Positions 65 to 61,315 of a stretch of 64,000 nucleotides of DNA are shown piece after piece (positions within the stretch are counted from its first letter, which is position 1; every line of letters begins with the position of its first letter). Position numbers and translations under genes: made by a program. The stretch comes from Ostrea edulis. Lineage: Eukaryota. Location: contig NC_079171.1 in NCBI RefSeq assembly GCF_947568905.1, positions 59,272,001 through 59,336,000 of the forward strand, read 5' to 3'. Under the pieces are notes generated by a model. That model was not told the DNA's origin and ran no database searches. It saw only the letters and a list, made by a program, of their open reading frames with translations.

Positions 65-101
65 CTTGTGCTGCTATGTAGATTTTCTCGCCATTGCAAT
101 C
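65..101 (-). CDS. PTP domain exon (DCNGEKIYIAAQG)
   Basis: tttcag|GAT ... CAA G|GTATGG, 37 nt. YIAAQG motif. An AG at positions 1-2 may be the next acceptor. Confidence 0.9.
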
Positions 102-3100
102 CTGAAATCCCATATACAGACTTTTGTGAGATCAATAATTATAAAAAGAATTTTAAAAAAGTAAATTTAAGAGGTAAAACATTGAATACTCATTACCTTA
201 ATGAAATTTGCATTAATGTAGTCATTCTCGGAATCACTCCACTTTTCTTTGAGTACCACTCTGGAATGTTCGTCTAAAACAGAAATTGCGATCTTCCACT
301 TTATATTCTGTTTCTATGGCTGCACTAAAATTATTTTAAGGTTATTTTAAAGAAAACATGAAAAATACACTTTACATGGAAATGTGGTTTTGAAGCGATT
401 TTTAACGACATTATCCGTCTTCTTTGCAGTTTGACAGATGTTGACGTCTCCAGGTGGAAATTTCTGTCAATTGAAAAAATGTTGTATTGAATATTTATGC
501 ACAATAATCGATTTGACAGCCAAATGCCACCAACCTAATACCCACTCAAAGTCGATGTTTCTTAACATGGGGATTTCATACCAAGAAATATGAAATCATT
601 GTAATAGTAGTTTCTATCTATTTCGTAAAGGATCGAAATAAAGTGTTTTGCCATTCAATACTGCCCATTTAAAATCATGTAGATAATGCATATCATGTTC
701 TTCGTTACATGCTAGAATTGACTAACGCTAGAATAGCCGTAATTCCTACTTTCTTTCTGTATGATAGTGATATACTCATTACCTTGTATTCGTGGAGAAA
801 AGTGTTGTTCTCTCCCTCGCTCTTTCTCAGAATCACGTCCTGTAGATCTTCAATTCGTATGTCTGTGTTGATCTGGACTGTGTTGTAATACCCACCGTCT
901 TCAGTCTCTTTTATTTCCGGTACATTGCATGATGCATCTGATTGAGTTTCTATCAAATAGTTGTATTTAATCAAATAGGTTGAAGATATTTCACAGACAG
1001 GGACTAAGTTCGTTTGGGCTCGAAGTTTATGAGATCATCAATATAGAAAAGGTTCTAACTTTGAACAGATAGAAAAACAAACTACCCTTCGCTTCAAATG
1101 CCTCAACACTCAGAAACTAGGTATGACATGCATAATTCACCGATCTCCTTGCATATATTAATGTTTTAATTACTTGCATGCCAAATTTCAATCCACGGGT
1201 TCTAAAAATAAGATATACCCATCATCGTTTTCTCGATTTCAGCCGTTTAGTTTTACTAGGACAGTTACCGGTCCAGGTCACCGGGTGGTTTTTTACCCTT
1301 GACAACAACAACATTCAGACTACCTGTGATGTTTTGATGCGTACCACTGATGTTTGCATATTGATTGGCTCTGCTCTTGTTTAATCCTTTTCTGAACGTG
1401 AAGTTTTGGACATCACTTCTTTCACTTGCACTATCCGATTTACTCATTCGGCGCCTACAAGCATAAACAACTAGTGCTATAATTGGAATACCTTTAACAA
1501 TTTCTTTACTTTACCTATAACTGCAAATTGAGATCAAATGGATGTTCTGTTGTCATTTTTTTTTTAAAATTTAGAATTATATGCCATCAAAGTACTGCAT
1601 TATGATATACGAGGATAACATATCAGTGAGGTAAACGTGTTAGGCTCAAGGTTACATATTGATTCAAAAGACTGTTTAAAAGATTTATGATACATACGTT
1701 GTCTAAATGATATACCTTAGAATTATAATCAACACAGCTCCAAGTATCAACAAGACAGCAGCAGTGGATACCGTTCCGCCTATTATTGCTTTTTGGGAAT
1801 CCGCAGTACTAACTTTTAGAGAGTGAACTGAAACAGAAAACTGAAAATTCATACCACTATAATTTACACTAGACACGTTGACTTGTAGTATATGGTCACT
1901 CTTTAACAACTATAATCGAATCGTTTCAAAGAACATTGAAACACGTGACTTGTTTTGTAGTTCTGCAGATATAATTAACTAGACCACATGGATAACAATG
2001 ATTAGGGAGTGAATAATTGGTCGCTGACTGCACTTACATAATATATTCGGACCCAAATCGAAAAGATCTAATTGTCATTGATTCATGAGATGAATTAATA
2101 TATGAGTTCGTATAATATTGAATTTAAATATTGAATTGATCAATAATTATCATCTCTTGTTATACGGAATCACCCCTTTCCAATGAAAACAATATCCATT
2201 TTCATAATTTCCGGAACGCAAGTTTTTTTTCCTGGTTCAAACATGCCAATGAAATCAAAAATTTTCATTTCAGCAATCCATGTTTGCCCAACTTTTTATT
2301 TTGCATTGCTTATAGGAATTATGAGATTAATCGCTATTCGTTTTCATTACCTTTCATCTAAATGAACGAGGACGCGATTGATAAGAATTAGGAAATGTCA
2401 TTTTAAGGGCTATGTATTCAATTATTCAATCATTTTGATAGATAAATGCGATTGGAAATAATTGTTGTCTTGTGATCATTTTGAATTCGAAGTTTGTGAA
2501 ATAAATTTGACACAAGCTGTTCCAATAAAATTTCGTATGGGTGTAAAAACACCAAGAAACATAGACTAATACAAACGTCTACATATTGTAGAAAAGGTGG
2601 CTTATTGTTTGTTTTTTTTCATTTATGTTCAATTTTATCCAGTTACCATCGCAGTGTGGTCCCTCCCATTCCTGTTGACAGCCAGCAGAGCAGTTCCCTT
2701 CGGTTTTCTCACACACGGGTTGTATTGTTTTACAATGTCCACATGCATTATCACAGTCACCGCCATAAAATCCGTCAGCACAAACTTAAAGAAAAACCCA
2801 AGAATGATACTTGTGATGAGTTTGCTTTGTAAATATTATAGTATGACTCATTTTTTCTACATATGATCAACATTACGAGTACAACGTTTATATTTTACAC
2901 GATACGGTATGTAACAACGAAACGGTGTAAAACAATTTGTTACACATCACATCATGAATGCTAATGTTATATAACAAAATTGTTTTTGTTTCATAGCGTT
3001 TTCATTCGTGCTACGCTTTGTAACAAATTATAAATACCGTCTCGGTGCAACAGTTTAGAGTTATTTCAGGGGAAAAAAAGCCTTGTAGATTCTTTTGAGT

Positions 3101-6100
3101 GGGTATATGTGCTTGACTTCCATGTTAATTCACACCCAGTATGTCAAGGACGATATGAAAACTACAAAAACATTCATCTCTTGGATATGGAGGTTTTAGG
3201 GTTAATGCTTCAATACAACAGCTGTAGTCAACTCCCCATTGGGTCAAATCCTGTCTGACGTGCTTCATAATGATGATTAGGCCTGTCTTGGCACACTTAT
3301 TTTCACCACGGATAACCCCGTTTACCTGATCAATATACAGGACTCGATGCGGATGTGGCCGGTCGAGAGGCGATGCTTACTCCTCCTAGGCACCTGATTC
3401 CACCACCTGTATATCCAGGGGTCCATGTTTGCCCGATTTTCTATATTGTATTGCTTATAGAAGTTATGAGATTGATCGTTGTTCTTTTATTTGCCTTTGT
3501 ATAATAGGCATCATGCCTATCACAAAATACTCCTCAGATTTATCTCTCTATATCATTATATCCCCCTCTCTCTGTAGGATATATTCAACATATTGCGCAT
3601 GAAAGCATTTTCTAAACATTGTGTGGGGGTAATGTGCTGTGATAATGTTGATGTAGCGAGCGAAGCATGGCATAGTGATTACATTAAAAACAACTATTGA
3701 ACTTAGTCGAATTGAAATTGAAAATGGTTGCGGGACACAGACAGAAAAATATATATTCTACTTCCATTGCTGATATGCTCTCTTTCAATCAATCAACCTT
3801 CCTATCTCAATCTATATATCAACCAATTAGACTAATCAATGGATTGATGAATATATCACAATGTATTTCTTTTTGTATTCTAATACATGGTTTCAGGAAA
3901 TATGTTGACATTATCAAAAAAGGACTGTCAGATATCATGCGATTTTATTGTTCGTTTGTTCCTATTTGCCTCGAGTTAAAATGTATGAAACTGATTAAAG
4001 TGTTCCAGAAGTTTGTTTGTATTTTCCCGCGTTGCAACTACCCATATTGCCCGAGAAATCCAACTCATGTCTTAAAATCGCAAGTACATAGCGGGCGAAT
4101 ATAGCACTACTTTGCCATATTTGTGTGTACGACGGTCAATCAATTAAATTACAATTTACTGGTTGCTAGTCTCGATGCAAGGTGTTTGTTGCAGGATTAT
4201 CCGGAGAATGAAGTCATCTGCAAGATTGATTGTTATTCTCAAAACCTCACATGTAGATCGTTATAACAATCTAGTTCGTGAATGCAGCCTATCACTGGGT
4301 CAAATGTTGTCTGACATGTTTCATGCCGATTGTTAGGCCGTTCATGTGACATTGATTTTGACAACGGATAACTCCGTTTACCTGATCATGACATAGAGCT
4401 CAAGGCGAATGTGTCCAGTCGAGAGTGGATAATTGCTCATTAATCTCTGGTGTGGATAGAGGTCCGTGCTTGCTCAATTATTATGTGTTGCTTACAGGAG
4501 TTATGAGATTGGTCACTGCCATTACCATAACCTTTCATCTTTCTATGTCTAAGATGATAACTACGTTTTGGCGCATTAGCACCCGGCTTCGTTGTTCTTT
4601 AAGTTTTTGAGAAATTGCGGTTTGACTCAAGGATGTTGAAAGACGGAGATTTTGAACACATGTGAAATGATGAAGGTGGAACAGTTTCATAGACACCTAT
4701 TTCTATAAGTTTGTACATGCCAACAAAACAACAGCAACAGTAGCGACGACAATATCACCACATAAATTCTCCTTTTCTGATCTATGTAAATCAGAACTAG
4801 TAGAACAAAAACTTCACAAACATGACAAAATACGGACATACAGATACATATTGACAGACATAAGATAGACAGAAAAACAGAGAAACATATCGTAACCCAA
4901 ATATACGTATCCGAGAATAACTGCAGATTGATCTCTTCATCAAATATGTTAAAATGAAACAAATATTAAATGTTGATTTACATACACTGATGCAAATGAA
5001 TCTATAAGACTATTTTCCTCGGAACCACATCCAAAATGGTACAGTTTTCACACCGTAATTAACAATTTGCTGTATATCGTTGTCATCCGCAGAACGGTGT
5101 GTAGCAATTTGTTACAAAGATCAGCATGAATTATGTTATTTAGCAGAAAACAAAGGCCTTAATTGCCTCCGAGTCGATTCGTCCACGATTTGCAGCAAGG
5201 GAGCATATATACAGCACGATCTCATGAACTTTAATTTTGAATGTTTAAACTATAGTGAAACAAAATGTACCTGCATAAGTATTAGGTTAAAATAAGTATT
5301 TGCTGAATTTAAAGGTCACCAACTAGGGATATGACAAATCAGTTGGAGGAATTAATCCATAAAACTCCCAGACGACAAGCTCTATGTACACTACGAAGCT
5401 TTCCTTTTTAGTGAAGTTGAGTTAAAGTTATCTAGCTAATTAGCACAAACTCATAAAAATCACCACGGGGGTGTGCATTTCATTTCTAATCAAGTAACCA
5501 AGTGTACATGTATTTTTTCCGTTGTAGAAAAATTGATAATCAGCATTGTGAATTGAATCATTAATGTTTAGTGGAAATAATTGGAATACCTCATAGAAAT
5601 GAATAAGAACAGCATTATTAGTATATTTGATTTTCTATAGATTTTTTCCACCATTACACGCACAATCTTATTTTGCTTTCTGTTGTTGAGAGATTGATTC
5701 TTTCAATTCGGGGTTTAGAGTGACAAATAAAAAACCCAAAGATTGAACGTTTAATAAACTCCAATTGAATGGTGAACAATAGATACACTTTTTTGAACTG
5801 TGAACGAAAACCCTTTAAAGGGAAATGCATGGAAAACGAGCGCAGAATGCTTGGTTTACGAATAATGATCAAATAAAATGTAACGGAGAAGTAGAACTCG
5901 GGTAATAGTGATTTGATTATAGTCATGTTTACCCTCAGTTTATGAAGTAACATTAACATGATCAAACAGTGAGGTTTACTTTGTAGTATAGGATTCAGAT
6001 GTAAGTTAATTTTTTACCATCGCATTTTGTTCCATTCCAGTGATCCTTACATCCTTTTGGACAAATCCCTGTCGATTTGTCACAGAACGTTCCTGTCTCA

Positions 6101-9100
6101 CAGTGTCCGCATGATTCAGAGCAGTTCAGTCCATGAAATCCGCCTTTACACACTGAATTATTGTGATATTCTTACTAATATTAATAATAACATGCGTCAT
6201 TTATTGCATTATCATAGTCTACAGGTTTTATTTGCCTCAACTATTTATTACTGAACATGTTTATAAACAAGTAAAGGTATATCTTCATATATAATGTTTA
6301 TTGTATGATAAGATGCAGATAAACAAACTTTGAATTTAACTTAGTCGATAATTAATGCTAAAACGAATAAATCCACTTCATAAACATGGACTAAAACATA
6401 TACTTTAGAATAACCAAAGTTATGATTATATATAATGCTATATACTCCATATTATTACCGTCACATTTGGATCCACTCCAGTGATCTTCACATTTATTTG
6501 GACACGTCCCCGTCATGTTATCACAGAACGTCCCTGTCGTACAGTGTCCACATGCTTTGGAACAATTCATGTCGTAGAAACCATCTTTACACACTGAATT
6601 ATACCAATCATTGAACTTTAAAATCATGGCATTTGTCATTTCATATCAAAACATGGTTAAAATGTTTTCACTTGACCCACTGCATGTTATTACAGGACGT
6701 CTCTCCCTTATTACATCCGCATGATTAAGACGAATTCATTTCGTAGTATCCTCCTTCGCAACTAGGTTAAGGGCTTCCATAGTAAAATGCACAATACTCA
6801 TGGCGTGAATTTGCACCTCAAATTCACAGGTATCATTGCACTTGTTACGGTTAAAAATCGAAACAATACATCCCATATGCTGACCGTGACTGAGCTACCG
6901 TAAATCCCCCTCATGGTAATTCCCCGTGACGTCAGTTGAATATCACGTAACACTTTGTTTTTGGAAAACAGCAAGAGGCCCTATTTGTGAACAAAAGTTC
7001 AAGTTCATGCGGGTAACCAGCTGAATTGTTATTGATGTACTCAGAAAAAAATCCTTAACATGAAAAGTGTTGAGAACAAATGCATACTCAAACTAAACAT
7101 GCTATAATTTAACAACATATCAACATTCATCAGCGAATTACCGGGGTTGTCCACATTCTTATACACATCATACCGTTAATATACAAGGCAGAAATTGGTC
7201 CCCGCATTTTTCAAACGCATAAATATATTTAAATCATAAATCAGAAAAATTCATATTATTTTTTATAGCAGATGAACCTGGACTTCGCCACTGTTTCTGT
7301 AGTATGGTATTATTTATGTACATGAGGGGATTTTTAAACGCATCAGTCATTCAGATTAGGGACGATTTCAAGGTTGCAATATAATATGAATATCACCTTT
7401 GTGCATACTATACATTAAAAATGGAGAATGATTTGATATCATAAAGGAATAATGTATATATTATATATATATTCATTTGACAAGATATATTTTCACGTAT
7501 ACAGCTTATGAATTGATAACAGTAGTAAATAACGACAACATATTATGAAACTTTCCCCGCGATGCAACTATCAGAACATGTACGCTGTGACGTACTTTTT
7601 CCATGAGACGTCATATGGTACGAAGTGCAGAGATGTACATTTATAACAGCACTGTGATTTTTCTAGAATAGCCTTATCTGAGCTGCGTTCACAAACTAAA
7701 TTATAGTAGTAGATAAAATGTCGAAAGGATTCTCTTCAATTCGTTCAGCTTCATTCGATGGAAATTTAAGGTAGCGAACAATGGTCAATCCCGTAACTCC
7801 TATAAGGAATGTTAAGTACAGTTGCTGTTGATGAAATAACTGCTCATATTGTCAAAACAGTCAAGGTTTTAAAGTTATTTTCGGGAAATATCGTGCAATG
7901 TGTTGAAATATCATAAGCTTTGATGTTGTTAGTTGGAGGAAGTGTTTCAAATTCATAAAAAGTTCTTTAGAATAGTTTAGAATCTACATTTGATTTGCAC
8001 AACTTTAAGCATATGTTGTAGCGAAATATGTTTGGGGTATCACAACTTTAATGGTATCAAACATAGTTCAGAAAGTATTTGTTTGAATGGAATCTGGAGC
8101 GCCCATTCAACGCATACTGTGAAAACGAACCTGGATAAATTTTGTTCAAATACATTTTTTAAGCAACGTTGACCAAATTTGTTGCAACTCAGTTATTACG
8201 TGGTCCGCTGGATGATGCATGCAATAGATTGTGAAATGATTTTATTATATGAAACGTTGCAACAATTCATTTTCGGGCCATATCACTTACATTAAGGGAA
8301 GGTTAAGTGTCGTTTTGCATTTCTTGAATGATGACAGGTGAAGATCACGAACATTGATCAATCTCGTAACTCCTATAAACAAAACAAAATAGCAAGTTGG
8401 GCAAACACGCTTTCCTGGACACGCAAGAGTGGGATCATGTGCCTAGGAGGAATAATCATCCCCTGTCGACCGGTTACATTCGCCATGTGGCCTAAATCTT
8501 GATCAGGTAAACGGAAACAATAATAATACTAATAATAATAGTCTGATTTACCACAATTTCACACTCAGTTTATGAAGCTTGCTGTAAAAGGAGGTAACAT
8601 AAATCAACGTATTTAGATGTGACGTGTGTTAAATGACGTGGAACGAAGTGGACTTTAAACACATACTGATTAAATTTCCACGTATAAAGGTAATTGATGA
8701 TGAACTTCGATTTGCTTGAAGGAGTTATGACATTGATCGTTGTTCGCTGTATCCACCTGTCATTGCTTATATTGATGAGTTACAATGTTACTTAAAAGTG
8801 TATGGGTAGTATAAAATTGAAATTTTCAGATACGTTTATAGCAGTATACTTTGATCAAACACTCAATGAGACAAAGTTAACGAAATTAAAGTTATAATAT
8901 TTTAGAAAACTTTTAATTGTCATACCGTTACATTTAGATTCATCCCAGTGATATTGACATCCCTCTAGACACGCCCCAGTCATGTTGTTACAATGCGTTC
9001 CTGTTTTACAATGTCCACATGTTTTAGAACAATTCTGGCTATAAAACCCGCCTTCACATACTGAAATATAGTAATCATTGAAAACAAGTTGAATTTCTAT

Positions 9101-12100
9101 TATTAGAAAAGGCAAATGGAATTAGATATGTTATTTTAATGGATTTATTGGCATCTATATTTATCACTTAACATTATCTTAGACTATATTTGTTGATGGG
9201 CATCATATAACAACGAGTGAAATGTGGATGTTTGAATGCAACACGAAATCCTCAACCAACTTAAAATTAATGATGTACAGGCTCAAAACAAAGAATTCAA
9301 CTTATTTGAAGTAAACTAACTAAAAGTTAATTACATAAACACATGTGATGGTCTTACCGTCACATTTAGTTCCGTTCCAATGATCCTGACATCCGCTTGG
9401 ACACGCCCCCGTCATGTTATTACATAATGTCCCTGTCTTACAACTGCCGCATGACTCAGAACAATTCAGTCCATAAAACCCGCCTTTACACACTAAAGCA
9501 AAGTCCATATTACTTTTAAAAAATGGCCTTCATTTTGTTCACACACATTTTATATAATTCTGAGGGGAAAAAATGCAACATATATATGCGCATGTGGTAA
9601 AGGAAAGGGAAAATGTGTTTTATATAATTTGCAGGTCCTGTCCAGTGTTTACTGTTAAACTAAACCTAGTTCAAGTATTCAACGAACACTCAATTAAAGT
9701 AAACTGTACCTAATCGAAATCAACGAATTCGTTATATATACTACTCAAAATTTGATAAGGATCACTAGGTTATATGTTTGTAATTTACCACTAACATAAC
9801 AAAAGACATACATTTGACTCAGAAACGTGTTTACTCAGGTTATGAATGAGAATTCATGAACGGCATGAACTTTTATCAATACGGAATGCTTGAAATATGA
9901 TAACAACACCAAAAGGCATTTCATTACAAAAATTTAGCAGAAAACCAAAGAAAGAATTACGCAGTTTTTGGGGGTAGTCCATCATTACACTTAGTCGATG
10001 AAGTGTCAATACCGGGTATGGCCTTCCCTTGCATCAATGACGGCTTGACAACGTCGAGCCATGCTGTCAATAAGCACTCGGATGTTTCCAATGGGAAGGC
10101 TGTTCCACTCTTCCACGGGGGCGTTTCCGAGCTCTGCCAGAGTCGTGGGTTGTGCTCTACGGCGTGAAAGGGCAATCTGCAGCATGTTCCATACATGCTC
10201 AATCGGGTTCAAGTCCGGTGAGTGCGCTGGCCAGTCCATACGGACAATTGTATCCTGCTAAAGGTACTGCTCCACCACCCTGGCGCGATGAGGACGAACT
10301 CAGGGCCAAGAGCACCAGCGTATGGTCTGACGTAAACATCGATGATCTCATCCCGGTACCGCACCCCCGTCATTGTTCCTCTCTCCAGGACATGAAGATC
10401 TGTTTTTCCATCCCTGCTGATTCCACCTCAGACCATGATGGAACCACCACCATAACGGTCATGTTCACTGATGTTGGCATCATGGAAACGTTCACGTTGT
10501 CATCACCACACTCGGTGCCTCCTGTCTGTAAAGTCCAAACAATACCTGGACTCATTGGTGAACAGAACTTGAACCCAATCGTTTTGTGTCCAGGTGACAT
10601 GATCTTCAGCCCAGTTCAATCGCTCCTGCCGGTGTCGAACAGTCAGAGGGACTCAAACACATGCCCTTCTCGAGTTGAAACCTGCATTGTGAAACCGATT
10701 CCGTATCGTCTGAGTGGACACATTCACCCCGAGGCGTTCAGGAGGTCGTTACGTAGGCTAGTTGCTGTCCAGAAGGGATGGCGTCGTGCCTGAAGAGCCT
10801 CAAAAAGGTATTGGCGTTGGGTTGTCGACCTCTGACGACCACCCCTATGTCGGTGTGCTGCTGTACGAAAAGTTTGCTGTCGGTTCCAGGCCCTGTTTAT
10901 AACACTCTGGCTGACGTTTAGTGCATTTGCAACGTCACGTTGTGAATAGCCAGCGTCAAGCATTTCAATACATCTGACCAGCTGTTCTGTCGGCAGGCGA
11001 CGCCTTACACGCTGAGGGGGCATTGTGTTGATAAACGTAGTGTAAACACTCAAGTGAGTTTGAAATTTTAGAAAGAATCAGACACCGCTGCCTGAGTGAA
11101 AATCGTGCAATGGTAGCAAAAGCAGAAACTTTGATGAGAAACGCATCTCCCATGGCATGAAATGCACGTGCAAGTTTGTTGAAGACGTTTTTGATTGTAC
11201 TTAGACACAATATTGCCAGTTATGCAGTTATTAATTTTTAAACAAAAACATCTATGATCCTTATAAAATTTTGAGTAGTATATTATATGCTGGCTTAAAA
11301 ATATCATGGTAGTACACAATGTACCAATTCATTACCCATATTCTTCCATGTGTAAACAGGGCGACATTGTTAGTGTCGTTTCGATGTACAATCTGGATAT
11401 TTTGTTCAAGTATCAACGATGTTATATGCAGTTAACAATTGTACATAAAGTACAACACTGAATGTTATATAAATATTGTGGCTTGTCAAGCACTGAACGA
11501 GAGTTTTCGTATATGCAAGTAATCATATACCAATGCAAAATAAAGGTAATCGATCATTTTTGGATCAAAATTCATTATCTAACCGTCACATTTGGATCCG
11601 TTCCAATGATCTTGACATCCATTTGGACACGCCCCTGTCACTTTATTGCAGAATATCCCCGTTTTACAGTGTCCACAAGGTTTGGAACAATTCGAGTCGT
11701 AGAACCCGTCTTTACACACTGGATTATATCAATCATTGAACATTAAAGTAATCGATTTTGTTATCACATGTGTAATTATATCAAAAGGTTTCATTTAGTT
11801 CCTATATGCATCATTTAAATATTTAATTAGTTCACGAATATCACATCATAGACAAGTAAATATGATAATATCTACTATATGGATCCAAAAAAAGTATTAA
11901 CAAAATAATTAAAGAAATTGAATATAGTTGACAGAAATAATATGTGTACATGTTGGTTAGTTATTTGAATTAGTGCTCGACTTCTTTGAACCAAAACTCT
12001 TAATATTTTAAAATTATTTGCTTGATAGTCATACCGTTACATTTCGGTCCGCTCCAGTGTTCTTGACATCCATTTGGACACGCTCCTGTCATATTATTAC

Positions 12101-17937: not shown

Positions 17938-17980
<43 letters not shown>

Positions 17981-20529: not shown

Positions 20530-20590
<61 letters not shown>

Positions 20591-22530: not shown

Positions 22531-22606
<76 letters not shown>

Positions 22607-43600: not shown

Positions 43601-43750
43601 AAAATAGATAGTTGGGCAAACACGGACACCTGGACACACCAGAGGTGGGATCAGGTGCCTAGGAGGAGTAAGCATCCCCTGTTGACCGGTCACACCCGCC
43701 GTGAGCCCCATATCCTGATCAGGTAAACGGAGTTATCCGCAGTCAAATCA

Positions 43751-43800
<50 letters not shown>

Positions 43801-58800: not shown

Positions 58801-61315
58801 TAGTATTTGTCCATAGTCCGTTGATTCATGTCAATTATAATACTATTTTTTCACAGTTTACACTATAATGAATTATATTGATTCAATACGCAACTTTGGA
58901 GATATCAGCTCTTCCGTGATGGATGTATGTTCAGTATTCTGTTGAACGCTTGGGTGGGTACAGGATTTATACATGTGTTATAGACTTGTTATATAGATAA
59001 GGATATAAGTTATGAAAGTGCAAATTTTGTTTATATCAACCGTTGGTATACATTAAGCTGACCATATCAAGGATAATATTTGTTTGAATTAGGTCATTAA
59101 ATTTAAAATGAAATTATTTTTTTTTTATATCCTCTTTTGCACGAGTGATACTTTTATTAAAGAAAGATGCATTTGGTTATCGATTTTTGTTTGACCTATA
59201 CTCATTACTTATTAAAATTGTGTGTCCCAACAGTTTGGGTGGTTGTATGGTGTCTGATAATCATTCTTTGGGCAATATATGAAGACACCGATACGCATTT
59301 GTACCCACCGTGTGTGGACGAAAGTATGTTTTACGTCTTACTGTGCGTAAGAGTTCCAGAAAGGAAAAGAAGTATTGAGCAACCCGGAGATTGTGTATTT
59401 CAATTAATGGCACAAGACTATCTTAGATTATTAAATACTAAGGCTCAATTACGGTATCAATATCGGATGTCAGATTGTTACTTGTTTGAATTATTTTTCA
59501 AAGCAAAATGAGGCTGTGTTCAAAACAATTCGAGCCAAACATTTGATTATTGTTGTTAAAGATTTTCTAAAGTATTGAAGTTTTAATGAGATCAGAACAT
59601 CTAAGTTGGTCGGTAATATGATTTTAAGTGGTATTTTTTTCCTTTTTTTTTTTGTTTGATACCTTTATGCATTCTTTATATGCAATTTCAAAAATTCTAT
59701 ATACATTCATACTCGATATGATTTTTAGCGTTTATCTGAACAATTTGCGCTCGAAATGGAAAAAAAAACAAAACAAAGGAAATTCAGACTATTTTGTTTC
59801 CAAATTGAGTTCGTTTTCATATGAACTAAAATACTTTCATAAATTAACCACTTTTAAGAGCATGTTAGCTAAAACATTATGTTGATGTTTAAAAAAAAAT
59901 GTGTCTTAGAGAAAGAAAAAAAATGGTCCGATTTATTGGTAGCAATTTTCAATGACCTTAGATGACCTTCAGCTTATCATATCTTTTTATCCAATTCATT
60001 GACATACCAATATTTTTGGTTAGTACCGTAGGTATGGTTGCAATCTTTAAATCCTAGAAAAATAATTAAATTCGAATTACATTCAGTAAATGTTTTTGAC
60101 CATTTTTCTAGAAAACTCTATCCTCAAAAAGATATTTTTAGAGGCGCTGAGGGAATTCGGACTAAATTTTAGGTAATTTGTTTCTGTGTTGCGTGGGAAA
60201 TATTTTCACATCATAATGTCTGCACATAGACTGTTTGTTTCATTGCAATAAAATGTAGTTATATTACAACCTGTTTGTTTGTTGTACATATTTTTGGATT
60301 TACAACTGCTAAAGCTTGGTCATTTGTGTTTTTTCAACATTGTTAGGTTCAGGGGTTGTTTCCATGGAAACGAACTCATTAACATATGTAAAAATTGTCA
60401 TTTTTCGAAGAGGAGGGACTTCTTGTCTATGATAAAATGATTTGCAGAAAATTTTGATTAATTTCATCTCAACAGCATATCCCCTTAAAAACAGAAGAGG
60501 TCACACATCGAGACAGTTTAGTTTATTATTATATATAAATACACAAATCATGTTTTTATTGTTGTGAATGCAAATATCATGTTTTTTAAAAAAAAACACT
60601 ATTTAAGTTTTATTCTTTCTTGTGATAATACTGAATACATTGTATCAGCAACGACAGATGCGCGGTTCAACTTTATTGAAGAAAAATGCCATATTTGGAT
60701 TTCTGACTTCTTCATGCGGCACTCTATCGTCATCTTTTATTTTTTGTTTATCTGTCTTTGCACTTGAATGGCGAGTCGAATGCCTTCTAGATTAATCACA
60801 CAAATAATTCGCCATAATTATGTAACGTAGAAACAATAATATAAATAACATATTAAAAGCGTGCATAGTGAATTATATCAATTTTTATTTTATATCCATT
60901 GTTTTGTTGGTAGTCATTAAATTTACAATGGTATTTAAATTATTGAATTGTTGAAATGACACCCCCCTCCCCGAAAAAACACCCCATCCAACATAAAACA
61001 TTTGATAACATTTGATCTAAAATACAGTACCTCTCTACATGTACTACTCTTTACGACTGGAATTCTTCGTAATCAAATTATGTTACTAAACAACAGATTG
61101 ATATCAATAACAAAAGTATCTTAACTTTATCTGAGGGGTGATTCCCCATAAATGAAAGATATACCTTGATATATAGATAGAAAGACATATAAGTGTAGCA
61201 AATACTTGCATGATTAACATCGGTAGCTTAAACATCAAATTATCATTAACTTACCTAAACCCTCAGTCTTGAGAACGAGGAGTCCAAAACACAGTAGCCG
61301 TGTGAACGACATCAT
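65..61315 (-). CDS. Multi-exon receptor-type protein tyrosine phosphatase: signal peptide, F-type lectin-like domain, 12 EGF-like repeats, TM, PTP domain (3' part lies beyond the left edge)
   Basis: 21 exons with GT/AG boundaries join in one open frame (2770 nt, 923 codons plus 1 nt). Motifs: CSFT...WW (lectin), C-x-x-GFYG-x-x-C repeats, hydrophobic TM, KNRF..FPYEHSRVVL, DYINANFI, YIAAQG. Confidence 0.9.
197..273 (-). CDS. PTP domain exon (YEHSRVVLKEKWSDSENDYINANFIK)
   Basis: ttttag|AC GAA ... AAG|GTAATG, 77 nt. HSRVVL and DYINANFI motifs. Confidence 0.92.
376..463 (-). CDS. PTP domain exon (KFPPGDVNICQTAKKTDNVVKNRFKTTFP)
   Basis: tgacag|AAA ... CCA T|GTAAAG, 88 nt, phase 0-1. KNRF motif. 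Confidence 0.9.
783..949 (-). CDS. Juxtamembrane/wedge exon (ETQSDASC...GGYYNTVQI...FLHEYK)
   Basis: tgatag|AA ACT ... AAG|GTAATG, 167 nt, phase 1-0. The F..EY pattern is typical just before RPTP D1. Confidence 0.85.
1324..1454 (-). CDS. Juxtamembrane cytoplasmic exon (RRMSKSD...NQYANISGTHQNIT)
   Basis: ttgtag|G CGC CGA ... ACA G|GTAGTC, 131 nt, phase 2-1. ORF 1265..1447. Confidence 0.82.
1716..1827 (-). CDS. Transmembrane exon (HSLKVSTADSQKAIIGGTVSTAAVLLILGAVLIIILR)
   Basis: tttcag|TT CAC ... CTA AG|GTATAT, phase 1-2. About 23 hydrophobic residues followed by basic RRR across the junction. Confidence 0.9.
2647..2784 (-). CDS. EGF-like exon 12 (VCADGFYGGDCDNACGHCKTIQPVCEKTEGNCSAGCQQEWEGPHCD)
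   Basis: ctttaag|TT TGT ... GAT G|GTAACT, 138 nt. More divergent, membrane-proximal repeat. Confidence 0.9.
3211..3500 (+). mobile_element. Short 3'-end copy of the Penelope-like family
   Basis: Shares gatgcttactcctcctaggcacctgat...ttatgagattgatc with 27191-27420. Confidence 0.8.
4190..4540 (+). mobile_element. Diverged 3'-end copy of the Penelope-like family
   Basis: gatcgttataac..atctagttcgt, gggtcaaatg, ggataactccgtttacctgatc, ggagttatgagattg. Confidence 0.75.
6018..6152 (-). CDS. EGF-like exon 11 (VCKGGFHGLNCSESCGHCETGTFCDKSTGICPKGCKDHWNGTKCD)
   Basis: attcag|TG ... GAT G|GTAAAA, 135 nt. Confidence 0.9.
6459..6593 (-). CDS. EGF-like exon 10 (VCKDGFYDMNCSKACGHCTTGTFCDNMTGTCPNKCEDHWSGSKCD)
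   Basis: attcag|TG ... G|GTAATA, 135 nt. ORF 6391..6639. Confidence 0.9.
6665..6761 (-). pseudogene. Degenerate EGF pseudo-exon
   Basis: ctag|T TGC GAA GGA GGA TAC TAC GAA ATG AAT TCG TCT TAA TCA TGC GGA ... TGT AAT AAC ATG CAG TGG GTC AAG TG. Homologous to sister exons but with a 1-nt loss at the acceptor, an in-frame TAA, an internal deletion and no donor. Confidence 0.75.
8336..8514 (-). mobile_element. Short 3'-end copy of the Penelope-like family
   Basis: ggtgaagatcacgaacattgatcaatctc...cctaggagga...gatcaggtaaacgga. Confidence 0.8.
8926..9060 (-). CDS. EGF-like exon 9 (VCEGGFYSQNCSKTCGHCKTGTHCNNMTGACLEGCQYHWDESKCN)
   Basis: tttcag|TA TGT ... G|GTATGA, 135 nt. ORF 8855..9115. Confidence 0.9.
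9358..9492 (-). CDS. EGF-like exon 8 (VCKGGFYGLNCSESCGSCKTGTLCNNMTGACPSGCQDHWNGTKCD)
   Basis: ctttag|TG ... G|GTAAGA, 135 nt. ORF 9320..9508. Confidence 0.9.
9739..11280 (-). mobile_element. Tc1/mariner DNA transposon, full length, defective DD34E transposase
   Basis: TIRs tactactcaaaatt..ataaggatca at both ends with flanking TA. Peptides MPPQRVRRRL..., FTDES, VWGGIS, WPAHSPDLNPIEHVW. Frameshifts present and a 22-nt deletion at 10295/10296. Confidence 0.93.
11584..11718 (-). CDS. EGF-like exon 7 (VCKDGFYDSNCSKPCGHCKTGIFCNKVTGACPNGCQDHWNGSKCD)
   Basis: atccag|TG ... GAC G|GTTAGA, 135 nt. The donor is weaker than in sister exons. Confidence 0.87.
12035..12169 (-). CDS. EGF-like exon 6 (VCRDGFYGAGCSETCGHCKLGTFCNNMTGACPNGCQEHWSGPKCN)
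   Basis: atttag|TG ... G|GTATGA, 135 nt. ORF 12000..12182. Confidence 0.9.
13195..13329 (-). CDS. EGF-like exon 5 (VCKGGFYDSSCSTPCGHCKTGTFCNNMTGECPNGCQDQWSGSKCN)
   Basis: atgcag|TG ... AAC G|GTAAGA, 135 nt. Confidence 0.9.
13441..13880 (-). mobile_element. 3'-end copy of the Penelope-like family
   Basis: ORF 13603..13800 (MVQGFQQSR...FHTNC) plus the 3' UTR. Confidence 0.85.
14573..14715. repeat. 143-bp imperfect palindrome with GTA triloop apex
   Basis: gacaacagctgttttgtttgaccc pairs with gggtcaaacaaaacagctgttgtc. Apex agcc-gta-ggct, centre 14644. Confidence 0.88.
15361..15500 (+). mobile_element. Short 3'-end copy of the Penelope-like family
   Basis: ggtcgacagggg...gttcgttatcttcac. Confidence 0.82.
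15998..16132 (-). CDS. EGF-like exon 4 (CKDGFYDSNCSKSCGHCKSGDVCDKVNGECPRGCQGQWSRPNCD)
   Basis: attcag|GG TGT ... GAC G|GTGAGT, 135 nt. Confidence 0.9.
16445..16579 (-). CDS. EGF-like exon 3 (CKDGFYGLKCAKPCGHCTPGTVCNKSAGACPNGCQDNWSGSNCD)
   Basis: atttag|TG ... A|GTAAAG, 135 nt. Lies within ORF 16422..16691. Confidence 0.9.
17392..17523 (-). CDS. EGF-like exon 2 (VCEDGFYGLNCSKPCGHCKTGTCNKLKGECPNGCQDHWNGSKCD)
   Basis: attcag|TG TGT ... GAC A|GTAAGA, 132 nt, phase 1-1. Confidence 0.9.
17812..18045. repeat. Compound (ATT)n/(AGT)n trinucleotide microsatellite
   Basis: Direct inspection. Produces the poly-S/V/Y pseudo-ORFs. Confidence 0.95.
18930..19400 (-). mobile_element. BEL/Pao integrase C-terminal fragment
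   Basis: LTTFLAEA..INSLPL, SPLTL, RQWRR..VQHLSSIFWKRWETEYLYTLQMRRKW. Confidence 0.82.
20068..20270 (+). mobile_element. Short 3'-end copy of the Penelope-like family
   Basis: Very close match to 43547-43753 (reverse complement). Confidence 0.85.
20534..20589. repeat. (CT)n microsatellite
   Basis: Direct inspection. Confidence 0.95.
22534..22616. repeat. (CT)n microsatellite
   Basis: Direct inspection. Confidence 0.95.
23707..24646 (+). mobile_element. Decayed Tc1-family transposase (second family)
   Basis: RSGRPRVTS, TVRNRLHEHNIRPRRPAVRP, ILFTEESRF, GGGSVMVW, GSHTRY*. Multiple stops and frameshifts. TIRs not confidently located. Confidence 0.85.
25773..25907 (-). CDS. EGF-like exon 1 (GCQAKHYGPNCDSCEEKCFDKQCDVFNGTCIYGCKNSAMKAPLCN)
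   Basis: ctccaag|GA TGT ... AAC G|GTAAGT, 135 nt, phase 1-1, 8 Cys. Not in the ORF track. Confidence 0.88.
26258..26420 (+). repeat. 21-bp minisatellite (gttccgtgcaaaccgttcacc)n
   Basis: About 7 degenerate units. Source of the pseudo-ORF VPCKPFT repeats. Confidence 0.9.
27191..29070 (-). mobile_element. Penelope-like retroelement (RT), 5'-truncated, no C-terminal GIY-YIG
   Basis: KGPKYRE, VPADK, YWIPQLHK, YDFPTLYT, GIPMGTNC, FRYIDDVL, SQLIRYARACS, then a stop at 27412 and an ~220-bp 3' UTR. Two frameshifts. Abuts (TA)n at 29071. Confidence 0.88.
29550..29692 (+). repeat. Second array of the same 21-bp minisatellite
   Basis: About 6 units, same orientation, same terminal gtgcaagaatcgtt. Confidence 0.9.
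29972..30160 (-). mobile_element. Diverged 3'-end copy of the Penelope-like family
   Basis: aacagtgatcaatctcataattcc...cctaggagaagtaa...gtcgaccggtca. Confidence 0.75.
30782..31030 (-). CDS. Exon 3: C-half of F-type lectin-like domain
   Basis: ttgcag|CT GTT CCC ... ATA G|GTAAGG, 249 nt, phase 1-1. PRQTGFSVYV...CP...NVTVN...ATIEICEVRVIG. Confidence 0.88.
31290..33790 (+). mobile_element. Non-LTR retrotransposon (CR1/L2-type APE plus RT), decayed
   Basis: IVALTETWLG, GHTLDIVI, NYRPMSNLPFVSK, LDISTAFDTI, YADD, LKLNTDKTE. Multiple stops and frameshifts. Confidence 0.88.
35016..35232 (-). mobile_element. SINE with Deu/Nin-like central domain
   Basis: Minus strand aaaccgaggtcccgtgtcgcagcaggtgtggcatgttaaagatccctccctgctcaaagg, with a (TCAA)-type tail. 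Family label is from recalled resemblance. Confidence 0.65.
35331..35795 (+). mobile_element. Penelope-like RT fragment interrupted by a SINE
   Basis: YDKR..FSIVNFPYLCNNIPLSPAYGVYI, insertion, then ...RACSAYDQF. Confidence 0.75.
35440..35703 (+). mobile_element. tRNA-derived SINE (Meta-domain-like) with 8-bp TSD
   Basis: TSD tcaactga at 35432-35439 and 35704-35711. A-box-like gaccgaacggtta, B-box-like gggctcatatccc, ccaccaataaaagctgg core, A-rich tail. Confidence 0.72.
35985..42525 (+). mobile_element. BEL/Pao LTR retrotransposon, heavily decayed
   Basis: Diverged direct repeats (LTRs) at about 36007-36203 and 42335-42525. Gag (KPETYESWK), Cys/His knuckles, AILDEQSN protease, KIRVVFD/KGPDL/YVDDGL RT, FTCLATRAIHIE integrase, FWKRWSREF C-terminal domain. 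Many stops. 5' boundary approximate. Confidence 0.92.
42555..42900. mobile_element. Penelope-like 3' copy (+, 42555-42835) followed tail-to-tail by an inverted short copy (-, 42852-42900)
   Basis: ...gttcgttatcttcacatttcat ... tgaaaggtgaagataacgga. Confidence 0.75.
43231..43458 (-). CDS. Exon 2: N-half of F-type lectin (FTP/F5-8C-like) domain
   Basis: ttttag|AA AAT CTA ... GGA A|GTAAGT, 228 nt, phase 1-1. NLA..KGTPSQSSTY...ADKAVD...CSFT...AWWKLPL...LEIQFR fits the fucolectin fold pattern. Confidence 0.88.
43547..43753 (-). mobile_element. Short 3'-end Penelope-like copy embedded in (TA)n
   Basis: Flanked by catatatata on the left and about (TA)23 on the right. Confidence 0.85.
43807..43948. 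repeat. 73-bp tandem duplication
   Basis: acgatatctgacgatgcaagcataa at 43807 and 43880. Confidence 0.85.
46053..46769 (+). mobile_element. Penelope-like element 3' fragment (RT C-terminus plus 3' UTR)
   Basis: ORF 46084..46332 is near-identical to the C-part of ORF 27412..28083. Ends ...cttcaccttgcata. Confidence 0.88.
47500..48748 (+). mobile_element. Tc1/mariner copy of the same family, 3'-truncated
   Basis: Same left TIR after TA. ORF 48344..48781 has MDDNARPH-x-SPDLNPIDH with 34-residue spacing. Homology stops at DSMAR and no right TIR is present. Confidence 0.92.
51854..51897 (-). ncRNA. Minimal type I hammerhead ribozyme (3' copy, stem III variant UGCACA)
   Basis: Same fold and core as the other copy, with one substitution in the stem III palindrome. 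Confidence 0.82.
52205..52248 (-). ncRNA. Minimal type I hammerhead ribozyme (5' copy, palindromic stem III)
   Basis: Minus strand: GCAUCA-CUGAAGA-GACA(UUAUU)UGUC-GAAA-UGCGCA-UC^UGGUGC. Intact core, 4-bp stem II, stem I GCAUCA/UGGUGC, AUC cleavage triplet. Confidence 0.88.
53238..53413 (-). mobile_element. Short 3'-end copy of the Penelope-like family
   Basis: atgaaaggtgaagatgacgagcagtgatcaatctc...ctgtcgaccggtcaca. Confidence 0.85.
54645..55095 (+). mobile_element. Penelope-like 3' copy containing a half-palindrome insertion
   Basis: ...YARACSAY..NRSRLLTNKLMVLGFQQ, then foreign 54759-54836, then the 3' UTR. Confidence 0.78.
55715..55900. repeat. Degenerate Cg170-like (oyster ~166-bp satellite) remnant
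   Basis: tgtggccccatcctaccccc...ttgaaca..ttga...cactacctga. Recalled resemblance, not a search result. Confidence 0.5.
55990..56770 (-). mobile_element. Second Deu/Nin-like SINE copy, split by a hAT MITE
   Basis: ccacacctgctg...gggacctc.gtttt...ccccatttagt shared with 35016-35232. Confidence 0.6.
56049..56551. mobile_element. hAT-type MITE (503 bp)
   Basis: TIR CAGAGATGGGG / CCCCATCTCTG, exact 8-bp TSD ctggagac (56041-56048, 56552-56559), many internal GTAATC/GATTAC motifs. Confidence 0.88.
58460..58572 (+). mobile_element. Short 3'-end copy of the Penelope-like family
   Basis: atgtccagggattcatgtttg...ggagttatgagattgatcactgttcg. Confidence 0.78.
61255..61315 (-). CDS. Exon 1: signal peptide MMSFTRLLCFGLLVLKTEGL
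   Basis: ATG ATG ... TTA G|GTAAGT. Phase 1 matches the next exon (G+AA = Glu). Hydrophobic core. Missed by the ORF track. Linkage across a 17.8-kb intron is inferred. Confidence 0.8.

What the first reader, a model, noticed from the sequence alone, without database searches (positions are those of the whole stretch)
65..61315. Lectin-tipped, EGF-stalked receptor tyrosine phosphatase: candidate glycan-sensing immune or self/non-self receptor
Seen: one open reading frame joins a signal peptide, F-type-lectin-like domain, 12 MEGF/SREC-type 8-Cys repeats, a TM and a classical PTP domain. Established: vertebrate RPTP ectodomains use Ig/FN3/MAM/CA modules, F-type lectin domains bind fucosylated glycans, and MEGF10/Draper/SREC repeats occur in scavenger and engulfment receptors. 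Inference: a pattern-recognition head on a long stalk wired directly to a phosphatase could act as an inhibitory glycan sensor. Similar proteins probably exist as an expanded, auto-annotated family in bivalves, but I know of no functional description.
Basis: partly seen in the sequence, partly recalled or inferred. Interest (0 to 1): 0.75.

Follow-up and report, generated by a model that had tools for sequence, protein, structure and literature searches.

The report
Oyster lectin-headed EGF-stalk receptor phosphatase
This is a real but ordinary member of a large mollusc family of cell-surface tyrosine phosphatases with a fucose-lectin-type head on an EGF stalk; the family is already in databases and was recently linked to parasite resistance in snails.

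Summary
The spliced gene is there, on the minus strand. It has 21 exons with canonical splice sites and matching phases: signal peptide, a two-exon head, 12 one-exon 8-Cys EGF repeats, a TM segment, a juxtamembrane exon and four short PTP exons. A 13th EGF exon has lost its donor.

- Only about the first 50 residues of the phosphatase domain lie in the window. The WPD loop and the catalytic HCx5R are beyond position 1.
- It is a splice model, not one continuous ORF.

The head family is truly homologous to F-type lectins (PDB 3cqo, E 8e-73; 1k12, E 9e-32). In this gene the fucose-binding His is Phe and the vicinal Cys pair is gone, so fucose binding is doubtful.

At least 45 proteins from oysters, mussel, scallop and abalone share the architecture, and one is a spliced mRNA contig. 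Two papers (2025, 2026) describe fucolectin/GBD–MEGF–tandem-PTP receptors at snail schistosome-resistance loci and propose glycan sensing.

This scan already noted the family elsewhere in this genome. The closest paralog, on Ostrea edulis chromosome OX387711.1, gives dN/dS of 0.3–0.6, which points to constraint.

Verdict: new member of a known kind.

The parts
61255..61315 (-). Exon 1: start codon and signal peptide (MMSFTRLLCFGLLVLKTEGL), phase-1 donor
   Evidence: The junction reads G-L-E-N-L-A, the same as in P0028. It is 89% identical to the N-terminus of paralog P0142.
43231..43458 (-). Exon 2: N-terminal half of the F-type-lectin-fold head. It carries CSFT where canonical F-lectins have CSHT.
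   Evidence: Pfam F5_F8_type_C E 0.0034. 67 relatives found. 73% identical to P0142. Motif columns.
30782..31030 (-). Exon 3: C-terminal half of the head (…ATIEICEVRVIG)
   Evidence: 58% identical to P0069 and 79% to P0142. It abuts exon 2 and exon 4 in the alignments to P0028, P0069 and P0129.
25773..25907 (-). Exon 4: EGF1, a divergent 8-Cys repeat next to the head
25278..25412 (-). Doubtful exon 5 (EGF2x). It has 7 Cys (the 5th Cys is now Arg) and no GT donor at the conserved position. It is probably skipped or dying.
   Evidence: The paralog L004 keeps 8 Cys and a G|GTATGT donor.
17392..17523 (-). EGF3 exon (132 nt, phase 1-1)
16445..16579 (-). EGF4 exon (135 nt)
15998..16132 (-). EGF5 exon (135 nt)
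13195..13329 (-). EGF6 exon (135 nt)
12035..12169 (-). EGF7 exon (135 nt)
11584..11718 (-). EGF8 exon (135 nt)
9358..9492 (-). EGF9 exon (135 nt)
8926..9060 (-). EGF10 exon (135 nt)
6683..6760 (-). Dead EGF exon remnant with in-frame stops
6459..6593 (-). EGF11 exon (135 nt)
6018..6152 (-). EGF12 exon (135 nt)
2647..2784 (-). EGF13 exon (138 nt), the membrane-proximal repeat
1716..1827 (-). Transmembrane exon (…AIIGGTVSTAAVLLILGAVLIIIL), phase 1 in and phase 2 out
1324..1454 (-). Juxtamembrane exon (RRMSKSD…), with the basic stop-transfer residues
783..937 (-). Pre-PTP exon (…GGYYNTVQINTDIRIEDLQDVILRKSEGENNTFLHEYK)
   Evidence: 57-69% identical to the same position in P0028, P0091 and P0129
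376..463 (-). PTP exon b, with the NVVKNRF motif (PTP motif 1)
197..273 (-). PTP exon c: (Y)EHSRVVL…DYINANFIK
   Evidence: Pfam Y_phosphatase E 0.0015
65..101 (-). PTP exon d: DCNGEKIYIAAQG. This is the last coding piece in the window; the gene runs on beyond position 1.

Best explanation
The window holds the 5' two thirds of one minus-strand gene. The genome is Ostrea edulis according to earlier scan notes, and interspersed repeats shared with O. edulis loci agree with that.

The gene encodes a type-I membrane protein. In order, it has a signal peptide, an F-type-lectin-fold head, a stalk of 12 (perhaps 13) laminin/SREC-type 8-Cys EGF repeats, one TM helix, a juxtamembrane segment, and the start of a classical PTP domain. 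Its relatives continue with an active D1 (WPD loop, VHCSAGVGRTG) and a catalytically dead D2. Their PTP region is closest to vertebrate RPTP-alpha and RPTP-epsilon.

This copy is a fairly young duplicate within a clustered, mollusc-wide family that annotation pipelines name 'RPTP kappa/alpha/epsilon/T-like'.

Likely working (inferred, not shown): the head binds a ligand on a cell or microbe surface. Because the fucose site is degenerate, that ligand need not be fucose and need not even be a sugar. Binding clusters or displaces the receptor and so changes which phosphotyrosine substrates D1 can reach. This would set the threshold for tyrosine-kinase signalling, plausibly from sister receptors that carry the same head on tails with paired YxxL/I motifs.

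I put identity as a family member and a single gene at about 0.8, and an immune or glycan-sensing role at about 0.35.
For: Gene structure:
- The exon chain has correct phases and no stop.
- Exon ends abut when aligned to P0028, P0069 and the mRNA-derived P0129.

Relatives:
- P0028 (Saccostrea 'RPTP kappa-like', 1064 aa) has the head, EGF repeats, a TM segment and two PTP domains.
- At least 45 proteins combine the head, a TM segment and a PTP. Nearly all have a single Cx5R, which means D2 is inactive.
- The Logan contig L001 (3914 bp) carries one 1200-aa ORF with head, EGF, TM and PTP, so the parts are co-transcribed in a relative.

Head and PTP homology:
- The head profile matches F-lectins: 3cqo at E 8e-73 and 1k12 at E 9e-32.
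- The AF2 model has pLDDT 91.9, and its top Foldseek hits are F-lectins.
- The PTP part of P0028 is closest to RPTP-alpha 6uzt, E 8e-111.

Constraint:
- Against paralog L004, dN/dS is 0.32 for the EGF exons and 0.56 for the head, while introns are 80-85% identical.
- EGF3-12 exons are 66-87% identical to each other, whereas their flanking introns are 45-67% identical.

Sister receptors:
- Short-tailed sisters carry paired YxxL/I motifs.
- One of them lies inside the span of an RPTP gene.

Published parallels: PMC12297450 and PMC13712769.
Against: - The catalytic core of this particular gene is outside the window, so I could not check whether it is intact.
- No database protein matching this locus was returned. 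The best exon identities were 73-89%, to paralog P0142.
- GenBank/RefSeq models of the O. edulis paralogs are split into an ectodomain gene and a PTP gene.
- The head lacks the His and the vicinal Cys pair of the fucose site.
- One EGF exon has lost its donor, and another is a dead remnant.
- The pairwise dN/dS averages over both copies and cannot show that this copy is the constrained one.
Confidence: 0.75

Rival explanations
1. The locus is a decaying or silent duplicate (a pseudogene in the making). It looks intact only because the duplication is recent.
For: - E5 lost one Cys and its GT donor.
- A dead EGF remnant lies at 6683-6760.
- Introns are full of transposons.
- No matching annotated protein was returned.
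- The sister copy L004 has a frameshifted EGF exon.
Against: - The 919 codons spread over 21 exons contain no stop or frameshift.
- All other splice sites are canonical.
- dN/dS is 0.3-0.6, not about 1.
- Skipping a phase 1-1 exon keeps the reading frame, so the loss of E5 is tolerable.
Confidence: 0.15
2. The lectin/EGF part and the PTP part are separate transcription units, or the main product is a truncated head-EGF-TM isoform without a phosphatase. This is how the O. edulis paralogs are annotated.
For: - P0006 (485 aa, 'MEGF10') ends by reading into the intron after the pre-PTP exon, and a 484-aa PTP-only model follows 1.5 kb downstream.
- P0003 and P0142 are likewise head-only models.
Against: - In L002, intact KNRF and DHSRV/DYINA exons with good splice sites lie unannotated between the two models, and the downstream model starts at an ATG inside an intron.
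- The split points differ between paralogs, which looks like prediction artefact.
- Full-length single models exist in six other species, and one is a spliced mRNA contig.
Confidence: 0.1
3. It is a genuine RPTP, but it acts in cell adhesion or development rather than in glycan sensing or immunity. On this reading the lectin-fold head has been re-used as a protein-binding module.
For: - In this subfamily His is replaced by Phe, the Asp is lost and the vicinal CC is lost, while the fold is kept.
- Vertebrate RPTPs mostly work in adhesion and axon guidance (established knowledge).
- MEGF10, Draper and SREC EGF stalks bind proteins (established knowledge).
Against: - Both Arg residues of the triad are kept in at least 90% of family heads.
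- Other RPTP subfamilies keep CSHT.
- The snail relatives sit at parasite-resistance loci (PMC12297450, PMC13712769).
- More than 40 RPTP transcripts are enriched in oyster agranulocytes, although it was not verified that they belong to this family (PMC13070813).
- The N-terminal half of the head evolves fast: dN/dS is 1.4 on few sites.
Confidence: 0.3

Closest known systems
MEGF/GBD-containing receptor-like PTPs of Biomphalaria (SudRes1 in B. sudanica, PMC12297450; 'subgroup 1C' scavenger-class-F-like receptors of B. glabrata LG5R, PMC13712769)
   Same: The domain order is the same: galactose-binding/fucolectin-type head, MEGF/SREC-type EGF repeats, a single TM segment and tandem PTP domains. 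They are also clustered paralogs that vary in EGF content, with head-EGF sisters that lack the PTP. The authors already propose glycan recognition.
   Different: They are gastropod genes, not bivalve. I did not test sequence homology between the snail heads and this one because no snail sequence was in hand. No resistance association is known for oysters.
Auto-annotated oyster proteins such as Saccostrea cucullata 'RPTP kappa-like isoform X3' (P0028) and Crassostrea virginica LOC111112824 (P0069)
   Same: They are collinear over every exon and 44-69% identical per exon. They share the CSFT head subfamily and the KNRFKTTFPYEHSRV motif.
   Different: They have only 4-5 EGF repeats, against 12-13 here. 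Their names ('kappa', 'alpha', 'epsilon') come from the PTP domain alone; their ectodomains have nothing in common with the vertebrate namesakes.
Vertebrate RPTP-alpha/epsilon (R4) and CD45
   Same: They have a tandem PTP with an active D1 and a weak or dead D2. The PTP region of relative P0028 scores best against RPTP-alpha 6uzt (E 8e-111) and then RPTP-epsilon.
   Different: Vertebrate R4 ectodomains are short glycosylated stubs, and CD45 uses FN3 modules. None has a lectin head or an EGF stalk. RPTP-sigma and LAR score nearly as well, so subtype orthology is not established.
F-type lectins (eel agglutinin 1k12, striped bass FBP32 3cqo, Streptococcus SpX and lectinolysin)
   Same: The fold and sequence family are shared. 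The A-x-D-G motif, both Arg of the sugar triad and the C-terminal CEVxV strand are conserved.
   Different: In this gene and its nearest subfamily the triad His is Phe, the Asp between the two Arg is lost, and the vicinal Cys-Cys is lost. The R-to-R spacing is one residue shorter. The domain here is membrane-anchored rather than secreted.
SREC-I/II (SCARF1/2), MEGF10, Draper, CED-1, PEAR1
   Same: The stalk is built from the same 8-Cys EGF repeats. Vertebrate SCARF1 proteins are hit through the stalk at E 3e-16. Short-tailed family members are annotated with these names.
   Different: Those proteins lack a lectin head and a PTP. They signal through NPxY or ITAM-type tails.

Membership tests
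Classical receptor-type protein tyrosine phosphatase (Pfam PF00102) | N-terminal PTP motifs (NxxKNRY/F, DxSRV, DYINA, IAxQGP) | tested here: met
   The window has NVVKNRF, (Y)EHSRV, DYINANFIK and YIAAQG in consecutive exons. Y_phosphatase E 0.0015 on the 25-aa exon.
Classical receptor-type protein tyrosine phosphatase (Pfam PF00102) | WPD loop and catalytic HCx5R(S/T) | not testable with these tools
   They are absent from the window because the gene runs off position 1. They are present in the relatives P0028, P0069 and P0129 as VHCSAGVGRTG.
Classical receptor-type protein tyrosine phosphatase (Pfam PF00102) | Signal peptide and a single TM helix upstream of the PTP domain | tested here: met
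   MMSFTRLLCFGLLVLKTEG and AIIGGTVSTAAVLLILGAVLIIIL followed by RRRM
F-type lectin domain | Sequence and fold homology to solved F-lectins | tested here: met
   The family profile A1 hits 3cqo at E 8e-73 and 1k12 at E 9e-32. Foldseek's top hits are 3cqo, 2j22 and 1k12. The window's two head exons fall inside the family clade, support 95*. The joined window head itself was not searched.
F-type lectin domain | Fucose-binding triad His…Arg…Arg | tested here: not met
   The window reads C-S-F-T (Phe at the His position). Both Arg are present (FRQG-T-VPRQ). See the column counts.
F-type lectin domain | Vicinal Cys-Cys and Asp in the NRxDCC…ER loop | tested here: not met
   This subfamily has FR-x-ST…NR without CC or D.
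F-type lectin domain | Demonstrated fucose/glycan binding | not testable with these tools
   This needs a recombinant head and a glycan array.
MEGF10/SREC-type EGF stalk | Tandem 8-Cys laminin-type EGF repeats, one per phase 1-1 exon | tested here: met
   There are 12 exons with 8 Cys each and the pattern CxDGFYGxxCxxxCGHCxxGxxCxxxxGxCxxGCxxxWxGxxC. EGF_laminin scores per exon are weak, but reach E 1.4e-20 on a relative's stalk. SCARF1 proteins are hit.
Mollusc GBD/fucolectin-MEGF-RPTP family (Pennance et al. 2025 type) | Head, EGF stalk, TM segment and tandem PTP on one polypeptide | tested here: inconclusive
   Head, stalk, TM and the start of D1 are joined in the splice model. The tandem PTP is seen only in relatives. 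There are no transcript data for this locus.
Paired activating/inhibitory receptor system | Closely related ectodomains on opposing signalling tails, genetically linked | tested here: inconclusive
   PTP and non-PTP members interleave on the head tree, with at least 7 changes forced. Tails with paired YxxL/I motifs exist, and one such gene lies within an RPTP gene's span. However, many non-PTP rows are truncated gene models, and there are no functional data.

The most novel reading that the evidence does not exclude
Molluscs may run a paired-receptor system built from one diversifying F-lectin-fold head. In this system, sister genes put the same head on ITAM-like double-tyrosine tails (activating) or directly on a tandem phosphatase (inhibiting). 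The degenerate sugar site of this CSFT subfamily would then mark a shift to a new ligand class, self or pathogen protein. That would be an invertebrate counterpart of the vertebrate KIR/Ly49/Siglec logic, with the phosphatase fused to the receptor rather than recruited to it.
Probability: 0.25. Interest if true: 0.7.

Novelty: new member of a known kind. Interest (0 to 1): 0.35.

Why it matters
On its own this gene is one more copy of a family that is already in the databases, already described for snails, and already noted twice elsewhere in this genome by this scan.

It has some value as a clean, hand-checked gene model in a species where the public annotation breaks these receptors into 'MEGF10', 'laminin gamma-1-like' and PTP-only pieces. 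Such breaks would distort family counts and expression studies in flat oyster, a species whose stocks collapsed after the parasites Bonamia and Marteilia appeared (PMC9679248 abstract).

The family is also a reasonable candidate set for oyster resistance mapping, because the snail counterparts lie at schistosome-resistance loci. The loss of the fucose-site His in one subfamily gives a concrete, testable split between likely fucose binders (CSHT heads) and heads with some other ligand.

Tried and rejected
- **Whole-window motif scan for WPD/HCx5R:** none found, because the gene is cut by the window edge.
- **Joined spliced protein:** Only exon-by-exon references were searched. The joined chain was checked locally for phase, stops and length, without being printed.
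- **Search for the window's own annotated protein:** three word searches and the exhaustive search returned only paralogs of 89% identity or less.
- **Head-only region search with P0028:** found just 2 proteins because few 5-residue words are shared.
- **Pre-PTP exon alone against the PDB:** no significant hit, so I make no claim about an RPTP-alpha-type wedge.
- **Supplement of PMC13070813:** contains none of the LOC ids of my C. virginica hits, so the hemocyte link to this family is unproven.
- **Literature searches for F-type lectin plus PTP architectures in oysters:** nothing specific found.
- **Alternative in-phase donors for E5:** they exist at 25284, 25206, 25203 and 25194, but none is at the conserved position.
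- **Upstream PTP exons:** none at 61.3-64 kb, so no upstream family member ends inside the window.

Full report
**1. What is in the window**

The window is AT-rich (32-39% GC), has no N runs, and is full of broken transposon ORFs. The feature lies on the minus strand.

Stop-free segments carrying 8-Cys repeats, a discoidin-like segment pair, a hydrophobic segment and PTP-type motifs occur in order from 61315 down to 65. I fixed exon ends by eye on the sequence and checked them by script. There are 21 exons with AG acceptors and GT donors. All extracellular module exons are phase 1-1. The TM exon goes from phase 1 to phase 2 and the juxtamembrane exon from phase 2 to phase 1.

The chain gives 919 codons with no stop.

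A 13th EGF-type exon (25412-25278) fits the phase. It has 7 Cys and reads A|TG where the donor should be.

Only single exons were searched, by reference.

**2.

The window contains only the first four short PTP-related exons: the pre-PTP segment, NVVKNRF, (Y)EHSRV…DYINANFIK, and YIAAQG. Against the relative P0028 these end at residue 592 of 1064. No WPD loop or HCx5R is present anywhere in the window, so the catalytic competence of this copy is unknown.

Per-exon Pfam hits are weak but consistent: F5_F8_type_C E 0.0034, EGF_laminin down to E 0.0013, and Y_phosphatase E 0.0015.

**3. Relatives and the splice model**

The exhaustive search with exon 2 gave 67 hits. One is P0028, a Saccostrea cucullata protein named 'receptor-type tyrosine-protein phosphatase kappa-like isoform X3'. 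It has a signal peptide, the same head, five EGF repeats, a TM segment, and two PTP domains with VHCSAGVGRTG in D1 and no Cys in D2.

A word search with its first 560 residues found 62 proteins. They come from Saccostrea, Crassostrea/Magallana, Ostrea edulis, Mytilus, Argopecten, Mercenaria, Mactra, Haliotis and other gastropods. By my own head HMM and motif scan, at least 45 combine the head, a TM segment and a PTP, nearly always with a single Cx5R.

The window's exons align to P0028, P0069 and P0129 in order, and their ends abut. In P0028, for example, E2 covers 23-95, E3 100-183, E4 185-227, and the PTP exons cover 490-524, 526-554, 556-580 and 581-592. The codons created at the junctions reproduce the relatives' residues, for example G-L-E-N-L-A at the exon 1/2 join.

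P0129 comes from a 3914-bp Logan contig of run SRR334219 with a single 1200-aa ORF. It is therefore a spliced transcript that carries head, stalk, TM and PTP together. This is direct evidence for co-transcription in a relative, not in this locus.

**4. The head is a real F-type lectin domain with a damaged sugar site**

A profile of 66 heads hits striped bass FBP32 (3cqo, E 8e-73 over its two domains), eel agglutinin (1k12, E 9e-32) and the streptococcal F-lectin modules. An AlphaFold model of the P0069 head has mean pLDDT 91.9, and F-lectins are its best Foldseek matches.

Column counts show:
- Both Arg of the fucose triad are kept in about 95% of heads.
- The His position is His in only 20 of 66 heads.
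- In the window and its nearest subfamily (P0028, P0068, P0069, P0003, P0005, P0006, P0010, P0027) the His position is Phe (C-S-F-T).
- In that subfamily the Asp and the vicinal Cys-Cys of the NRxDCC…ER loop are gone.

Other RPTP subfamilies (P0114, P0115, P0118, P0120, P0121, P0124) keep C-S-H-T. 'F-type-lectin-like' is therefore right for fold and ancestry, but fucose binding by this copy is doubtful.

**5. Genomic context**

Three O. edulis paralog loci were fetched from GCA_947568905.1, chromosome OX387711.1 (77.1 Mb): L002 at 56.31 Mb, L003 at 56.42 Mb and L004 at 59.58-59.62 Mb. The window shares interspersed repeats at 85-98% identity with them. This fits earlier scan notes that the genome is flat oyster.

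L004 is collinear with the window across exons and introns at 80-85% nucleotide identity. It is a recent duplicate of the whole gene.

Nei-Gojobori estimates on 507 aligned codons give dN/dS of 0.32 for the EGF exons and 0.56 for the head. Within the head, exon 2 gives 1.42 and exon 3 gives 0.27, on few sites. This is constraint with a fast-evolving N-terminal half of the head, not neutral decay.

L004 keeps 8 Cys and a G|GTATGT donor in the exon equivalent to 25412-25278. The window copy has therefore lost both, and the exon is probably skipped. A dead EGF remnant at 6683-6760 and a frameshifted EGF exon in L004 show exon birth and death within the stalk.

**6. Why no database protein matches this locus**

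The public O. edulis models of these genes are fragmented.
- In L002, a 485-aa 'MEGF10' model ends by reading into the intron after the pre-PTP exon, and a 484-aa PTP model starts 1.5 kb later at an intronic ATG. Intact KNRF and DHSRV/DYINA exons with good splice sites lie unannotated between them.
- L003 and L004 are split at other places.

I read this as a prediction artefact rather than evidence for two genes, but only transcripts can settle it.

A 1343-aa head+EGF+PTP model ends just upstream of L004, and its last exon is of the P0028 type. It might be this window's gene; I could not test that.

**7. Function**

Shown: the architecture, the homology of each part, and constraint.

Inferred: a ligand-binding head on a long rigid stalk that regulates an RPTP-alpha-like tandem phosphatase. 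The relative's PTP part is closest to 6uzt (E 8e-111), then to RPTP-epsilon, sigma and LAR.

Full-length short-tailed sisters carry paired YxxL/I motifs: YDNL…YEEL in C. virginica, and YDKI-x8-YSKI-x8-YEEI in Saccostrea P0043. PTP and non-PTP members interleave on the head tree. P0043 lies within the span of a P0028-type RPTP gene. This fits a paired-receptor idea, but many non-PTP rows are truncated models, so the evidence is weak.

**8. Comparison with the literature**

- PMC12297450 (Nat Commun 2025) describes RPTPs with an extracellular MEGF stalk, a galactose-binding-like domain and tandem PTPs in Biomphalaria sudanica. There are 17 genes, clustered, at the SudRes1 schistosome-resistance locus, and a resistant haplotype has lost EGF domains.
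- PMC13712769 (PLoS NTD 2026) describes B. glabrata 'scavenger class F-like' receptors. Subgroup 1B has galactose-binding/fucolectin heads, and subgroup 1C has the same plus two PTP domains. The authors suggest these receptors recognise fucose or galactose glycans.
- PMC13070813 reports more than 40 RPTP transcripts and many Draper/MEGF transcripts enriched in C. virginica agranulocytes. I could not verify that they belong to this family.

For oysters I found only automatic names.

Earlier notes of this scan (s1-279195, s1-311942) found the same family on other DNA of this genome.

**9. Verdict**

This is a real gene, a new member of a known kind, with a hand-checked model and some local detail: a degenerate sugar site, a dying exon, a young duplicate and fragmented public annotation.

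Expression and the catalytic half of this copy remain untested.

Noticed in passing
window 51700-52550: Other first-stage notes (s1-281876, s1-281963) call this a retrozyme with two hammerhead ribozymes. Rfam finds no family at gathering score anywhere in the window, and no hammerhead even at E<=1 in this stretch. The roughly 350-bp unit is a dispersed repeat that also occurs in introns of the paralog loci L002, L003 and L004 at 78-93% identity.
   Followed up: partly
window 36493-42277 (+): A degraded BEL/Pao-type LTR retrotransposon lies in intron 2. It has a Pao retrotransposon peptidase (E 6e-18) and DUF5641, and the gag-pol frame is broken into several ORFs.
   Followed up: partly
window 48068-48781 (+) and 10006-11053 (-): Two Tc1/mariner-type transposase remnants (DDE_3 E 2e-10; HTH domains) lie in introns 1 and 11. 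They are close copies of one another judging by their ORF translations.
   Followed up: partly
window 27190-28145, 46053-46769, 13441-13876, 43539-43754, 20068-20272: One interspersed repeat family occurs at least five times in the window's introns and again in all three paralog loci, at 85-98% identity. ORFs at 27412-28961 (-) look like a reverse-transcriptase element but had no Pfam hit.
   Followed up: no
L002 22682-22982 (O. edulis OX387711.1, about 56.33 Mb): The public annotation splits a paralog into a 485-aa 'MEGF10' gene and a 484-aa PTP gene. Two intact PTP exons are left unannotated between them. L003 and L004 show similar fragmentation, with names such as 'laminin subunit gamma-1-like'.
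   Followed up: partly
L004 32016-32148: In the closest paralog, the exon equivalent to EGF5 matches in two overlapping frames, which indicates a frameshift.
   Followed up: no
L005 10001-11777 (Saccostrea cucullata JAVVLV010006005.1): A 300-aa gene lies on the same strand inside the span of the 1064-aa RPTP gene model. It encodes a head, a TM segment and a tail reading YDKI-x8-YSKI-x8-YEEI, with no EGF stalk.
   Followed up: partly
P0001, P0012, P0016, P0025, P0030, P0034, P0056 (database proteins): The exon-2 search also recovered proteins made of 3-13 tandem canonical F-lectin domains (CSHT, NRxDCC…ER) with no TM segment or PTP. Their organisms were not looked up.
   Followed up: no
P0116 (Patella caerulea): A 726-aa protein pairs a similar EGF stalk with a tyrosine kinase domain (PF07714) instead of a phosphatase. 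My HMM detected no head in it.
   Followed up: no
window 17831-18049: A long TAG/CTA trinucleotide array of about 72 copies lies in the intron between EGF2x and EGF3.
   Followed up: no
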